Below are positions 10,226-12,851 of a DNA stretch of 64,000 nucleotides, one piece after another. The notes under the pieces were generated by a model, which saw nothing but the letters and a program-made list of their open reading frames with translations, was not told where the DNA came from and searched no databases. Made by a program: the position numbers and the translations under genes. Every line of letters begins with the position of its first letter. Positions within the stretch are counted from its first letter, which is position 1. The stretch is taken from positions 1 through 64,000 of the IMG/VR virus record IMGVR_UViG_3300035703_000006. The stretch is one strand, 5' to 3'.

Positions 10226-10387
10226 ATGCAAGAAACATTTGTAAGGTTAAGTGAAGATCAAATCAATTTGATTCTATTCACCTTAGAACAACAAGAGAGT
10301 GATTTCAATTCTGTTGAACAATCTCTATGTGAAGCAATCATTGATACTTTCACCACTGCTTTAGTAGAGTTAAACACTCAAGCATAA
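10226..10387 (+). CDS. Hypothetical protein (53 aa), paralog of 5268..5420
   Basis: LILFTLEQQESDFNSVE; last gene of the early block. Confidence 0.65.
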   Translation: MQETFVRLSEDQINLILFTLEQQESDFNSVEQSLCEAIIDTFTTALVELNTQA

Positions 10388-10390
10388 GAG

Positions 10391-10500
10391 ATTATTATCA
10401 TTTATAACAAAATAACGTTATAATTGATAATTCAATTAAATGTATTAAAAAACATAGTTTAGTGAATTGTGTTGATATGATGATAGTGTTATAAAACCTT
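10391..10500. other. Very AT-rich non-coding tract (candidate DNA-unwinding element)
   Basis: Counted 20 G/C in 110 nt, and 7 in the first 60 nt; contains TTATAAC-N8-GTTATAA. Confidence 0.5.
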
Positions 10501-10557
10501 CTTTTTATTGTCTTATATTCTCTCTAAACCCCTCTGGTTCTTGTTGTCTTGGCCTGC

Positions 10558-10617
10558 ATTATACCATAAGACCTAAAAAAAGTCAAGCACCTTACAGACT
10601 CTTCTAGGGGTGGCACA
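10558..10617 (-). promoter_or_regulatory. Leftward sigma70-type promoter carrying a TGTGCCA half-site
   Basis: Minus strand: TGTGCCA (10617-10611) ... TTGACT (10586-10581), 17 nt, TG-G-TATAAT (10563-10558); half-site 54 nt upstream of the -10, as in the cassettes. Confidence 0.75.
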
Positions 10618-10624
10618 AGGAGTT

Positions 10625-10654
10625 ATTGACAAAAACCTGTCAATACTTTATAAG
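10625..10654 (+). promoter_or_regulatory. Putative rightward sigma70-type promoter inside a palindrome
   Basis: ATTGACA-N6-TGTCAAT 10625-10644; TATAAG at 10649-10654, 17 nt after TTGACA. Confidence 0.5.
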
Positions 10655-10660
10655 AATGAA

Positions 10661-10697
10661 ACTCCTAAGACTCACACATCTTATGAGTCTTAGGAGT
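10661..10697. repeat. Perfect 14-bp inverted repeat
   Basis: ACTCCTAAGACTCA-N9-TGAGTCTTAGGAGT. Confidence 0.85.
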
Positions 10698-10884
10698 ATT
10701 TTGCTAGTTATTCCTGAGACTCACGATACTCAAACCACTTCAAAAACTGGCACATCGTATCATGAGTCTCACAGATTCGGGTGTAGACTTATAGGGTGGG
10801 TGGCAGAGGGAAGATCATCAAATACTGATAACTGATAAGAATTACCCAGAATCCAGTGATTGCAATACTTTTTCGGGGCATTAT

Positions 10885-10934
10885 AGTTTTGTCCCAAAAC
10901 CCCCTATAAATAACCCTAGTTTTGGGACAAAACT
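10885..10934 (+). promoter_or_regulatory. T4-type late promoter flanked by a 16-bp inverted repeat of self-palindromic arms
   Basis: AGTTTTGTCCCAAAAC (10885-10900) ... TATAAATA (10905-10912) ... GTTTTGGGACAAAACT (10919-10934); ATG at 10936. Confidence 0.75.
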
Positions 10935-10935
10935 T

Positions 10936-11100
10936 ATGAGACCTCAAAAGTATAAGAATTTAGGTGAAACTGAAAGAATGCGTGTACCCTTATGCAAGCA
11001 AATTACAAGTTTGTGTGATGCATTAGATAAAAAAGCAGAAGATGGTTATGATGTCGTTGCTTTATTAGATTCGTTCATTGAGAGCATACACAATATGTGA
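10936..11100 (+). CDS. Small ribbon-helix-helix-like DNA-binding protein, paralog B (54 aa)
   Basis: Hand-translated MRPQKYKNLGETERMRVPLCKQITSLCDALDKKAEDGYDVVAYLDSFIESIHNM; shares K[FY]xxxGETxxxRVPxC..LD with 2423..2587. Confidence 0.6.
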   Translation: MRPQKYKNLGETERMRVPLCKQITSLCDALDKKAEDGYDVVALLDSFIESIHNM

Positions 11101-11505
11101 ATCATTCGTTATTACTTATCAGTTCGTCTTATCATTCGTTATATCCTCGCAGTTCGTGCATACTTATCTCTTCGTCTTATGATTCGTTGTCTATACTTAA
11201 CATCATTATGAGTTCATTACACAACCCCCCATAATGTTTGCTATTTGAATCAACCAGTGCTATACTATTCATGATACTCAGTTTCTGACATAAACTGGTG
11301 TCGTCCTCTGAGTATCATTAATACCCTATGAGTTCGTTACACGACCCCCCATAAGGTTTGTTATTCTTATTGACCAGAACTATATTATTCGTGTCTCTCA
11401 GTTCGTGTTATAAACTGATGCCCTCCCTTCGTTATATCTAACCCCCCATATGGTTTCGTATTAGAATAAGGCAGTAATGAATATAAACTATTCGTGATTG
11501 TTCGT
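11070..11505 (+). repeat. Strand-biased TTCGT short-repeat (iteron-like) array
   Basis: 14 TTCGT copies counted on the + strand; the six at 11105-11187 are spaced 18,12,18,18,12 nt; no ACGAA seen in the interval. Confidence 0.75.
11207..11460 (+). repeat. Degenerate 120-bp tandem repeat (2 copies plus a partial third)
   Basis: TATGAGTTC.TTACAC.ACCCCCCATAA.GTTTG at 11207 and 11327; third ACCCCCCATA at 11441. Confidence 0.75.
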
Positions 11506-11736
11506 TTATTATAATTAAACAGCACTGTTTGACACTTATATTTTGTGTTGTTGTATTCTTATATCTAACCGATGCCCCCTATATAAAAACGCATCACTAC
11601 CCTAACCTACAACGGACCGAAAACGACCTTCAAATTGTCTTTCAAATAAAAAAATTTTACCCAATTTTTTTTTTCTTCCAAGGTTCACGCACAAAAAATA
11701 AAAAATGATATATAAGTTTAGAATTCAATAAAAAAG

Positions 11737-11895
11737 ATGACAATAAGATTAGAAATTGATGATTATGAAAAGGATCTTTTAATTGATACGATTCAACATA
11801 GATTGGATACGGACAAAATCCTAGTAATCAATAATAGTTTAAAAGAAGAACTCGAAGATCTTTTAAGGAAAGTGGAAGAAGATGAATACGTATAA
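11737..11895 (+). CDS. Hypothetical protein (52 aa)
   Basis: Hand-translated MTIRLEIDDYEKDLLIDTIQHRLD... Confidence 0.6.
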   Translation: MTIRLEIDDYEKDLLIDTIQHRLDTDKILVINNSLKEELEDLLRKVEEDEYV

Positions 11896-12101: not shown

Positions 12102-12851
12102 ATGGCTAAAGGATTTACGGTAAAAGCAAAACTTCCTACAGGTCCTGTGGAAGGAGAATTTAATTTAGAAGCAGCAAAAGAAATGATGAGAGGCAAGTCA
12201 GTTGTCTTTTGTCTACCTGGAAGAGGAGTTTCGTATCTTTATTTGAAGAATTTTGTTCAATTGTGTTTTGATCTTGTTCAAAATGGAGCAAGTATCCAGA
12301 TTTCACAAGATTATAGTTCAATGGTGAACTTTGCCCGATGTAAGTGTCTTGGGGCAAATGTTCTCAGAGGACCTAAGCAAATTCCTTGGGATGGAAAACT
12401 ACAATATGATTATCAACTTTGGATTGATAGTGATATTGTTTTTGACACTGAGAAGTTCTATCGTCTTGTAGCAATGGATAAAGATATTGCTGCTGGTTGG
12501 TATTGTACTGAAGATGGACACACAACATCTGTTGCACATTGGTTGCAGGAAGATGATTTCCGTAATAATGGTGGAGTAATGAATCACGAAACCTTAGAGA
12601 CGATGAGCAAGCGTCGCAAACCATTCACAGTTGATTACACAGGTTTCGGATGGGTTCTGATTAAGAAAGGAGTCTTTGAAAATCTTGAATATCCTTGGTT
12701 TGCTCCGAAGATGCAGGTGTTTGAATCTGGTGAGGTTCAAGATATGTGTGGCGAAGATGTCTCATTCTGTCTAGATGCAAAAGAAGCAGGATTTGAAATC
12801 TGGTGTGATCCTCAGATTCGTGTGGGTCATGAGAAAACAAGAATTATTTGA
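12102..12851 (+). CDS. Glycosyltransferase-like (GT-A fold) conserved cyanomyovirus protein
   Basis: LWIDSDIVF (DxD), GFGWVLIKKGVFE, GEDVSFC, VRVGHEK pattern. Confidence 0.75.
   Translation: MAKGFTVKAKLPTGPVEGEFNLEAAKEMMRGKSVVFCLPGRGVSYLYLKNFVQLCFDLVQNGASIQISQDYSSMVNFARCKCLGANVLRGPKQIPWDGKLQYDYQLWIDSDIVFDTEKFYRLVAMDKDIAAGWYCTEDGHTTSVAHWLQEDDFRNNGGVMNHETLETMSKRRKPFTVDYTGFGWVLIKKGVFENLEYPWFAPKMQVFESGEVQDMCGEDVSFCLDAKEAGFEIWCDPQIRVGHEKTRII

What the first reader, a model, noticed from the sequence alone, without database searches (positions are those of the whole stretch)
10885..11100. Late promoter caged between two palindromic operators, directly upstream of an unannotated RHH-like gene
Seen: a perfect 16-bp inverted repeat (10885-10900 / 10919-10934) whose arms are each self-palindromic (GTTTTG-TCC-CAAAAC and GTTTTG-GGA-CAAAAC). 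The 18-nt loop contains the T4 late consensus TATAAATA, and the second arm ends 1 nt before the ATG of a 54-aa ORF missed by the ORF track. The ORF reads strand (ETERMRVP)-helix-helix. Established: RHH proteins bind paired sites as dimers of dimers and usually autorepress; T4 late promoters are TATAAATA read by the gp55 sigma factor. Inference: an autorepressed, late-expressed transcription factor. Cruciform extrusion could also gate the promoter.
Basis: partly seen in the sequence, partly recalled or inferred. Interest (0 to 1): 0.75.

Follow-up and report, generated by a model that had tools for sequence, protein, structure and literature searches.

The report
Late-promoter hairpin switch before small phage gene
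In a T4-like cyanophage, a real 54-residue gene is preceded by a hairpin with a late promoter in its loop, the known T4 device that restricts translation to late infection; the hairpin arms also look like binding sites for the gene's own product, which in sister phages is the tail domain of an HNH nuclease.

Summary
The inverted repeat is the longest perfect one of its geometry in the 247-kb genome. The 54-aa ORF is a real gene under purifying selection (dN/dS about 0.1-0.3).

The best-supported mechanism is the T4-type switch known for e, soc, 49, I-TevI, segB and mobE. RNAs that start upstream fold into a -35 kcal/mol hairpin that buries the SD-like GGGA and the AUG. RNAs from the NATAAATA-type late promoter in the loop lack the 5' arm and leave the AUG free. 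The same layout precedes the gene in 29 of 30 distinct related loci and in the HNH-fused alleles.

The arms are two copies of a quasi-palindromic element that stays nearly invariant while synonymous sites saturate. The element also persists in lineages where the hairpin is weakened or lost.

The protein belongs to an unannotated family of about 100 clusters. In sister alleles it is the C-terminal domain of an HNH-type nuclease, so DNA binding is plausible. Its model has ribbon-helix-helix topology, but no sequence or fold search confirms RHH membership.

Best reading: dual control of the I-TevI kind, a new variant of a known kind. Cruciform gating has no support.

The parts
10865..10953 (+). 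Extended RNA hairpin predicted on transcripts that start upstream; it buries the SD-like GGGA, the AUG and codons 2-6
   Evidence: -35 kcal/mol, z -5.5, 0 of 200 shuffles fold as well; flanks outside the arms add -14.7 kcal/mol (z -3.8) and the AUG is paired.
10885..10900 (.). Arm 1, holding element E1 (10886-10900, GTTTTG-TCC-CAAAAC): 5' strand of the hairpin and candidate protein-binding site
   Evidence: conserved in 28 of 30 distinct loci
10901..10918 (+). 18-nt loop/spacer carrying the late promoter
   Evidence: the spacer is 17-18 nt in all two-element loci and otherwise variable in sequence
10905..10912 (+). TATAAATA, a NATAAATA-type late promoter; the late start is inferred near 10918
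   Evidence: loop motif kept as TATAAATA, CATAAATA, CTAAATA, TATACATA or TATAGATA; cyanomyovirus late promoter NATAAATA (PMC2984593). The start site is an inference from T4 geometry.
10919..10934 (.). Arm 2, holding element E2 (10919-10933, GTTTTG-GGA-CAAAAC): 3' strand of the hairpin, entire 5' UTR of the predicted late mRNA, and candidate binding site over the start of transcription
   Evidence: E2 ends 1-2 nt before the ATG in 29 of 30 loci
10924..10927 (+). GGGA, a weak Shine-Dalgarno-like tract 8 nt before the AUG, paired with TCCC of arm 1 in the long RNA
   Evidence: GGGAC is kept 8-11 nt before the ATG in the HNH alleles as well. Its function is inferred.
10936..11100 (+). Gene for a 54-aa protein: basic extended N-terminus (conserved M1 R2 P3 Y6 L9 G10 R16 P18) followed by two acidic helices; an unannotated family
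10860..10887 (+). Weak sigma-70-like candidate (TTGCAA-N16-TATAGT) that could supply hairpin-containing early transcripts; in the sister clade a TATAAT sits at the equivalent of 10861-10866
   Evidence: consensus match only, not evidence of function

Best explanation
This is a dual-control cassette of the kind known for the T4 homing endonuclease gene I-TevI. (1) Translational gate. Any transcript that begins upstream carries both arms and folds into a long hairpin (16-bp core, extended over 10865-10953). The hairpin pairs the SD-like GGGA, the AUG and the first codons, so the gene is not translated. The late promoter TATAAATA in the loop is read by the phage late sigma factor. It should start transcripts at about 10918, the first base of arm 2. 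These RNAs lack arm 1, keep only a weak 5' stem and can be translated, so the protein is made only late. (2) Autoregulation. The two arms are also two copies of a 15-bp quasi-palindromic element that flank the promoter, and E2 covers the transcription start. They are most probably bound by the gene's own product, which would then limit its own late transcription. The product is a small dimer-type DNA-binding module that, in sister alleles, forms the C-terminal domain of an HNH-type nuclease. Shown here: the repeat and its rarity, the conserved geometry, the fold energies, the reality of the gene, the promoter motif's genome-wide behaviour, nucleotide-level conservation of the elements, and the HNH fusions. 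Inferred: the start site, the translational block, DNA binding and autorepression.
For: Gate. Long versus short RNA energies are -35 vs -4.6 kcal/mol in the window, -35.4 vs -3.4 in L011 and -32.9 vs -10.8 in L006. All 21 aligned loci fold into the long hairpin. Sequence outside the arms extends the stem over the AUG: z is -2 to -6.3 in the window's clade, the mean z is -1.8 over 22 loci, and 10 of 22 fall below -1.64. The HNH-fused alleles L038 and L083 have 18-19-bp hairpins with CTAAATA or TATAAATA in the loop, ending 3-4 nt before their ATG. Their arms are not palindromic and their inner parts differ on both sides together. In L006 the upstream gene stops 12 nt before arm 1, so read-through is certain there. 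T4 precedent: PMC2988022, PMC3014915. Promoter: and PMC2984593. Operators. All 30 distinct loci carry the element and 28 carry two. The elements stay nearly invariant while dS is 0.5 to more than 1 and the spacer diverges. E1 is a direct copy of E2 in L075, L076 and L081. L076/77 keeps both elements although the hairpin is lost, and L080 keeps one element with no hairpin. The element centre changes from 3 nt with G/C to 4 nt A/T-rich in the subfamily where T12 and R14 become M and I and two residues are inserted after P18. DNA-binding role: HNH fusions in three subfamilies, conservation with period 2 in the N-terminal segment, and an extended strand plus two helices in the model.
Against: There are no transcript, translation or binding data. 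An upstream promoter for the window's own gene is only a weak consensus match, and a terminator-like hairpin at 10661-10697 may stop transcripts from the upstream genes. The inter-arm covariation is confounded: the varying T/C position is degenerate in all half-sites, so the compensation is expected by chance about half the time. L076/77 and L080 lack the hairpin. L038 carries a module 81% identical to the window's but lacks the palindromic elements. The element occurs only at this locus in the genome. RHH membership is unconfirmed, and the nearly invariant Asp at the N-cap of helix 2 is unusual for a phosphate-contacting RHH turn.
Confidence: 0.55

Rival explanations
1. Hairpin only. The repeat serves purely as the T4-type RNA gate. 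The arms are conserved because arm 2 is the whole 18-nt 5' UTR (start region, SD-like tract, A-rich spacer) and arm 1 must complement it. The protein does not bind them.
For: Geometry and energetics. HNH alleles keep the hairpin without palindromic elements. TGTCCC/GGGACA is the most widely shared core. Intra-arm palindromes show no compensatory change.
Against: Both elements persist where the hairpin is lost (L076/77), and one persists where there is no hairpin (L080). E1 is a direct copy in three lineages. At dS above 1 a stem constrained only by pairing should show many double substitutions, yet the arms are nearly invariant. Subfamily 3 lacks the GGGA tract.
Confidence: 0.2
2. Operators only. 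The two palindromes are operators for an RHH-like autorepressor, and the inter-arm complementarity is a by-product of having two copies of a palindromic site.
For: Element conservation, direct-copy lineages and the parallel change of protein and site. RHH-like topology. Two palindromic copies are automatically complementary at 12 of 15 positions.
Against: It does not explain the stem extension over the AUG outside the elements. It does not explain the hairpins of the HNH alleles, whose arms are non-palindromic and co-vary. It does not explain the fixed abutment of E2 to the ATG in 29 of 30 loci. No RHH match was found by any search.
Confidence: 0.15
3. Homing-site reading. E1/E2 are the recognition site of the HNH-module endonucleases carried by sister phages. 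The stand-alone module is a nuclease-less derivative that occupies the site and protects it, or is simply a remnant.
For: The HNH allele sits in the same slot and replaces exactly the segment from inside arm 1 to codon 2, which removes the palindromes. The HNH halves are 76% identical while the modules are 42% identical. Decaying intermediates exist (L040, P0008).
Against: No cleavage or homing data. Flank identity between L038 and L026 is flat at 89% on both sides, so no recent conversion tract is visible. The stand-alone form is the majority and is under purifying selection, so it is not a mere remnant.
Confidence: 0.07
4. DNA-level structure. Cruciform extrusion of the repeat gates the promoter, or the repeat is kept perfect only by template-switch correction without any function.
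For: A perfect repeat; quasi-palindrome correction could mimic compensation.
Against: An 18-nt central spacer makes extrusion kinetically unfavourable (established knowledge). The stem extension is imperfect and bulged, and the fixed relation to the promoter and AUG points to RNA. Direct-copy lineages cannot extrude.
Confidence: 0.03

Closest known systems
I-TevI regulatory region in the phage T4 td intron (and I-TevII, I-TevIII)
   Same: The late promoter sits immediately upstream of the ORF. An RNA structure sequesters the ribosome-binding site on early and middle transcripts but cannot form on late ones. A binding site for the gene's own DNA-binding domain overlaps the late promoter and gives autorepression (PMC2988022). 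The gene is linked to a homing-endonuclease family.
   Different: The window's gene has no nuclease domain. It lies in an intergenic block, not in an intron. There are two quasi-palindromic sites that are themselves the hairpin arms. The DNA-binding module is unrelated to I-TevI's zinc finger and helix-turn-helix. The host phage is a cyanomyovirus. Binding is untested.
mobE of Aeromonas phage Aeh1 (free-standing HNH) and segB of T4
   Same: Free-standing endonuclease genes whose ribosome-binding site is sequestered by a hairpin, with a late promoter placed so that late RNA escapes it (PMC2988022, PMC3014915). The L038 and L083 alleles of the present locus are HNH-type genes with exactly this layout.
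   Different: The window carries only the C-terminal module. No sequence relationship to mobE was tested.
Translation-initiation hairpins of T4 late genes e, soc and 49
   Same: Long early transcripts form an inhibitory helix over the SD and AUG, and late promoters (TATAAATA) lie in the DNA encoding the 5' strand or loop (PMC3014915).
   Different: Those genes encode lysozyme, a capsid decoration protein and a resolvase. They have no associated palindromic repeats and no autoregulation.
Ribbon-helix-helix autorepressors (Arc and Mnt of P22, CopG, omega)
   Same: Size of about 50 aa, a basic N-terminal segment conserved with period 2, then two helices joined by a Gly turn. Paired or palindromic sites overlap the protein's own promoter.
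   Different: No significant sequence, profile or fold match to any RHH family. The turn reads G-x-D rather than G-x-S/T/N. The dimer was not modelled.
Modular HNH homing endonucleases of phages (I-HmuI, the Mob family)
   Same: A small HNH catalytic domain joined by a basic linker to a separate DNA-binding module. These genes insert into intergenic regions of T4-like phages.
   Different: The module here belongs to no described nuclease-associated DNA-binding family in Pfam. It exists mostly as a stand-alone gene. The nuclease half is far more conserved than the module half.

Membership tests
T4-type late promoter (NATAAATA read by the gp55-type late sigma factor) | Match to TATAAATA / NATAAATA | tested here: met
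   Exact TATAAATA at 10905-10912
T4-type late promoter (NATAAATA read by the gp55-type late sigma factor) | The motif behaves as a promoter in this genome, and this site has the usual spacing to the start codon | tested here: met
   17 of 33 sites lie in the 7% of DNA that is intergenic; 19 lie within 80 nt upstream of a same-strand ATG; the usual gap is 19-39 nt and here it is 23 nt
T4-type late promoter (NATAAATA read by the gp55-type late sigma factor) | Conserved at the homologous position in related loci | tested here: met
   Every two-element locus has a TATAAATA-like motif in the spacer, with variants at positions 1, 2 and 5
T4-type late promoter (NATAAATA read by the gp55-type late sigma factor) | Late, replication-coupled initiation at a mapped 5' end | not testable with these tools
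   Needs 5' end mapping during infection
T4-type RBS-sequestering hairpin with nested late promoter | A stable helix over the SD and/or AUG on the long transcript | tested here: met
   -35 kcal/mol, z -5.5; GGGA and AUG are paired
T4-type RBS-sequestering hairpin with nested late promoter | The late promoter is placed so that late RNA lacks the 5' strand | tested here: met
   The promoter is in the loop and the predicted start is at the 5' edge of arm 2. The short RNA folds at -4.6 kcal/mol, no better than shuffles. The start site itself is inferred.
T4-type RBS-sequestering hairpin with nested late promoter | The gene lies on longer transcripts made earlier | tested here: inconclusive
   Certain by layout in L006. 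In the window there is only a weak promoter match upstream and a possible terminator at 10661-10697.
T4-type RBS-sequestering hairpin with nested late promoter | Pairing maintained in evolution | tested here: inconclusive
   93% of cells paired, 4 pairs with double changes, 0 of 500 shuffles, but this is confounded by the palindromy of the arms. Independent support comes from the flank extension and the co-varying inner arms of L038 versus L083. Counter-examples: L076/77 and L080.
Ribbon-helix-helix (RHH) superfamily | Significant sequence or profile similarity to an RHH family | tested here: not met
   No RHH family for the protein or any of 72 relatives at E up to 5; PDB profile searches find none
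Ribbon-helix-helix (RHH) superfamily | Strand-helix-helix fold matching solved RHH structures | tested here: inconclusive
   The topology fits in the deep-alignment model but not in the shallow one. Foldseek PDB gives 0 hits, the best VIA Z is 4.2 with no RHH, and AlphaFold DB hits have E > 2 with 3 RHH names in the top 10.
Ribbon-helix-helix (RHH) superfamily | Obligate dimer with an intermolecular two-stranded sheet | not testable with these tools
   No multimer prediction was available
Autorepressor with operators at its own promoter (I-TevI-like or Arc-like) | Conserved, sequence-specific repeated sites overlapping the gene's promoter | tested here: met
   Element present in 30 of 30 loci and doubled in 28. 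It is nearly invariant at dS 0.5 to more than 1, and it occurs in direct or inverted orientation.
Autorepressor with operators at its own promoter (I-TevI-like or Arc-like) | The protein binds those sites and lowers transcription | not testable with these tools
   Needs EMSA or footprinting and reporter assays
HNH homing endonuclease | An HNH catalytic domain in the protein | tested here: not met
   The window's ORF is the 54-aa module alone. HNH is present in the allelic L038 (E 0.004, sub-threshold, full profile length) and in P0016 (E 0.0011). The own genome holds 4 other HNH genes, none fused to the module.

The most novel reading that the evidence does not exclude
An HNH nuclease domain has repeatedly fused, in frame, to the N-terminus of a resident autorepressor in different cyanophage lineages. 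It borrows the repressor's DNA-binding module to home into the repressor's own operator-hairpin, which the insertion destroys. The widespread stand-alone module then doubles as a site-occupying immunity factor against such nucleases from co-infecting phages.
Probability: 0.12. Interest if true: 0.8.

Novelty: new variant of a known kind. Interest (0 to 1): 0.5.

Why it matters
T4-like cyanophages lack MotA and Asi, and their gene timing is poorly understood (PMC2984593). This locus shows that the T4 device of nesting a late promoter in a start-site-masking hairpin is conserved in a cyanomyovirus lineage. It also gives an easily testable case. It defines an unannotated family of about 100 clusters of ~55-aa proteins with a family-specific DNA element. 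That makes it a candidate first dedicated DNA-binding regulator of these phages beyond the late sigma system. The alternation between stand-alone and HNH-fused alleles at one slot, with the nuclease half much better conserved than the targeting half, offers a natural system for studying how homing endonucleases acquire their DNA-binding domains.

Tried and rejected
- **Family searches:** Pfam and PHROGs on the protein and on 72 relatives gave no informative family. tblastn against GenBank phages found nothing.
- **Structure searches:** PDB sequence and profile searches gave only noise. Foldseek PDB on both models gave no hits. VIA wide gave Z of at most 4.2. AlphaFold DB clusters gave E > 2. 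The ESM Atlas found only unnamed look-alikes.
- **RNA searches:** tRNA and Rfam scans, including E-value mode on 10300-11800, found nothing.
- **RHH profile comparison:** it could not be done, because relatives cannot be drawn for a virus record.
- **Window-level TATAAATA enrichment:** absent, so I replaced it with the genome-wide positional test.
- **Covariation as proof of the hairpin:** I first took the A:U to G:C change as proof. I downgraded it after seeing that this position is degenerate in all half-sites and that direct-copy lineages exist.
- **Intra-arm palindromes as RNA or DNA hairpins:** no compensation.
- **Recent homing footprint between L038 and L026:** none; identity is flat at 89% on both flanks.
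- **Strong upstream promoter TTGACA-N17-TATAAG at 10626:** it lies in a 25-nt insertion found only in the window, so it is not part of the conserved design.
- **Paralogues of the module in the genome:** none.
- **Other late promoters nested in long hairpins in this genome:** none.

Full report
**Setting.** The window is the first 64 kb of a complete 247,112-bp viral record. DNA similarity places it among T4-like cyanomyoviruses of Synechococcus and Prochlorococcus. Only the glycosyltransferase gene at 12102-12851 is shared at the DNA level with GenBank phages. The finding lies in an unusual 1.35-kb stretch (10388-11736) with no long ORF apart from the 54-aa one.

- Arms 10885-10900 and 10919-10934 are perfectly complementary over 16 nt, with an 18-nt loop.
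- Each arm contains GTTTTG-N3-CAAAAC.
- TATAAATA is at 10905-10912.
- The ATG at 10936 follows arm 2 after one base.
- This is the longest perfect inverted repeat with a 3-30 nt loop in the whole genome; 20 block-shuffled genomes never exceeded 15 nt.
- It is the only one of 93 NATAAATA sites flanked by arms longer than 7 nt.
- The exact palindrome is unique in the genome.

**The ORF is a gene.**
- Substitutions between relatives fall mainly at third codon positions.
- dN/dS is mostly 0.1-0.3, while dS reaches saturation within one subfamily.
- Profile searches recover about 100 clusters of 53-60-aa proteins with a conserved N-terminus (M-R-P-x-K-Y-x-x-L-G ... R-V-P) and two helices. None has a Pfam domain or an informative name.
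- Gene callers have called it independently in many contigs, in conserved synteny.

**The late promoter is credible.** TATAAATA is not enriched in the window alone. Genome-wide, however, 17 of 33 copies lie in the 7% of DNA that is intergenic, and 19 lie within 80 nt upstream of a same-strand ATG, usually 19-39 nt away. Here the gap is 23 nt. NATAAATA is the accepted late promoter of cyanomyoviruses, all of which carry g55, g33 and g45 (PMC2984593). In every related locus the spacer keeps a TATAAATA-like element while the rest of the spacer diverges.

**What the repeat most likely does.** In T4, genes e, soc, 49, I-TevI, I-TevII, I-TevIII and segB, and mobE of phage Aeh1, are silenced on early and middle transcripts by a hairpin over the ribosome-binding site. 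A late promoter is placed so that late transcripts lack the 5' strand (PMC2988022 and PMC3014915). The present locus has exactly this anatomy.
- RNA 10860-10965 folds at -35 kcal/mol (z -5.5), with the GGGA tract, the AUG and codons 2-6 paired. RNA from 10918 folds at -4.6 kcal/mol, no better than shuffles, with the AUG free. L011 and L006 show the same contrast.
- All 21 aligned loci fold into the long hairpin.
- Sequence outside the arms extends the helix over the AUG. It contributes -11 to -16 kcal/mol (z -2 to -6.3) in the window's clade. The mean z over 22 loci is -1.8, and 10 of the 22 fall below -1.64.
- In L006 the upstream gene stops 12 nt before arm 1, so read-through RNA must exist there.

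**The allelic HNH genes strengthen this reading.**
- In L038 the same genomic slot holds a 135-aa ORF: an HNH-type domain (sub-threshold Pfam match over the full profile), a basic linker, and the module at 81% identity to the window's protein.
- Homology to the window stops inside arm 1 and resumes at codon 2. Compared with L026, 301 nt replace 43 nt.
- This ORF has its own 18-bp hairpin with CTAAATA in the loop, ending 4 nt before its ATG. The independent fusion L083 has a perfect 19-bp hairpin with TATAAATA in the loop.
- The arms of these hairpins are not palindromic, and their inner parts differ between L038 and L083 on both sides together.
- HNH fusions occur in three module subfamilies. 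Their HNH halves are 59-76% identical while the modules are 37-42% identical. L040 and P0008 look like decaying intermediates.

**Why the operator idea survives.** I first read the A-to-G and T-to-C changes in the L011 clade as compensation. The changed position is degenerate in all half-sites (GTTTYG), so that argument is weak. The larger table points to sequence-specific recognition instead.
- All 30 distinct stand-alone loci carry the element [A/G]TT[T/A][T/C]G-N3-4-C[A/G][A/T]AAC, and 28 carry two copies. The spacer is 17-18 nt, and E2 ends 1-2 nt before the ATG in 29 of 30.
- The elements are nearly invariant although synonymous sites are saturated.
- In L075, L076/77 and L081, E1 is a direct copy of E2, not an inverted one. 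In L076/77 the long hairpin is lost (-8 kcal/mol) yet both elements remain. L080 keeps one element and has no hairpin.
- The element centre changes from 3 nt containing G/C to 4 nt rich in A/T in the same subfamily where T12 and R14 are replaced and two residues are inserted after P18. This is a single transition, so it is only suggestive.
- Intra-arm pairing shows no compensatory change. That fits protein recognition rather than small hairpins.
- I-TevI provides the precedent for combining both controls (PMC2988022).

**The protein.**
- A 6-sequence alignment gave a two-helix hairpin model.
- A 72-sequence alignment gave residues 7-19 extended, then helices 20-35 and 40-53, at pLDDT 88. That is the topology of an RHH monomer.
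- Conservation in the N-terminal segment has a period of two (T12, R14, R16, P18).
- No search confirms RHH.
- The turn reads G-x-D, with a nearly invariant Asp.
- I therefore call it an RHH-like DNA-binding module by inference. The main basis is its role as the C-terminal domain of a nuclease.

**Verdict.** The cassette is best read as an I-TevI-style dual control: a translational gate formed by a hairpin with a nested late promoter, plus probable autorepression through two elements that double as the hairpin arms. It governs a small module gene that alternates with HNH-fused alleles. This is a new variant of a known kind, in a phage group where such regulation has not been described in the literature I could search.

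Noticed in passing
window 10661-10697: A perfect 14-bp hairpin (9-nt loop) followed by AUUUUG. It looks like a terminator on both strands and is conserved, with a compensatory series at one pair: A:T in the window, G.T in L009, G:C in L011, L013 and L019. It may end the upstream operon or belong to a small RNA.
   Followed up: partly
window 10586-10558, minus strand: A strong sigma-70-type promoter, TTGACT-N17-TATAAT with an extended TG (11 of 12 matches), conserved in all five aligned relatives. It would transcribe leftwards, antisense to the + strand gene array; 295 of 324 crude gene calls are on the + strand.
   Followed up: partly
window about 10620-10644: A 25-nt insertion found only in the window among five relatives. 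It carries TTGACA and creates a TTGACA-N17-TATAAG promoter-like site whose predicted start coincides with the hairpin at 10661.
   Followed up: partly
window 11101-11573: Non-coding DNA downstream of the gene: TTCGT-rich short repeats (11101-11200), a 120-nt tandem repeat (11207-11446, 73% identity), and the most conserved block of the region (11454-11573, 0.90-0.97 mean pairwise identity, above neighbouring genes). There is no Rfam match and the function is unknown.
   Followed up: partly
L038:2194-3159, L040:2337-3077 (also L026); homologous to the region after window ~11672: A second, larger HNH-type endonuclease ORF (321 or 246 aa; HNH_3, E 2.8e-7) is inserted downstream in relatives but absent from the window. 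This intergenic block seems to be a hot spot for endonuclease insertion.
   Followed up: partly
G000:C1 133953, 221347, 245364, 246677: The genome holds four HNH genes elsewhere. TATAAATA lies 23 nt upstream of ORF starts at 221013 and 244982, so at least two appear to be driven by late promoters, without long hairpins.
   Followed up: no
G000:C1 83675 and 93928: Two other TATAAATA sites are flanked by 7-bp inverted repeats whose 3' arm abuts the ATG. These may be weaker versions of the same gating, though they are not clearly above chance.
   Followed up: no
L040:1270-1470: The 71-aa N-extended allele is preceded by an imperfect 21-bp hairpin with CCTAAATA in the loop, a 33-aa ORF remnant, and a duplicated copy of the arm-2-like sequence plus linker codons. 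This looks like a decaying HNH fusion.
   Followed up: partly
P0014 (124 aa, metagenomic): One relative carries two tandem copies of the module in a single polypeptide. That would mimic a covalent dimer and fits a module that dimerises.
   Followed up: no
L083:430-500, L038:1190-1250: The arms of the HNH-allele hairpins also have self-complementary ends (GTATT-N9-AATAC, GTAT-N11-ATAC), although they lack the GTTTTG/CAAAAC hexamers. This is unexplained.
   Followed up: no
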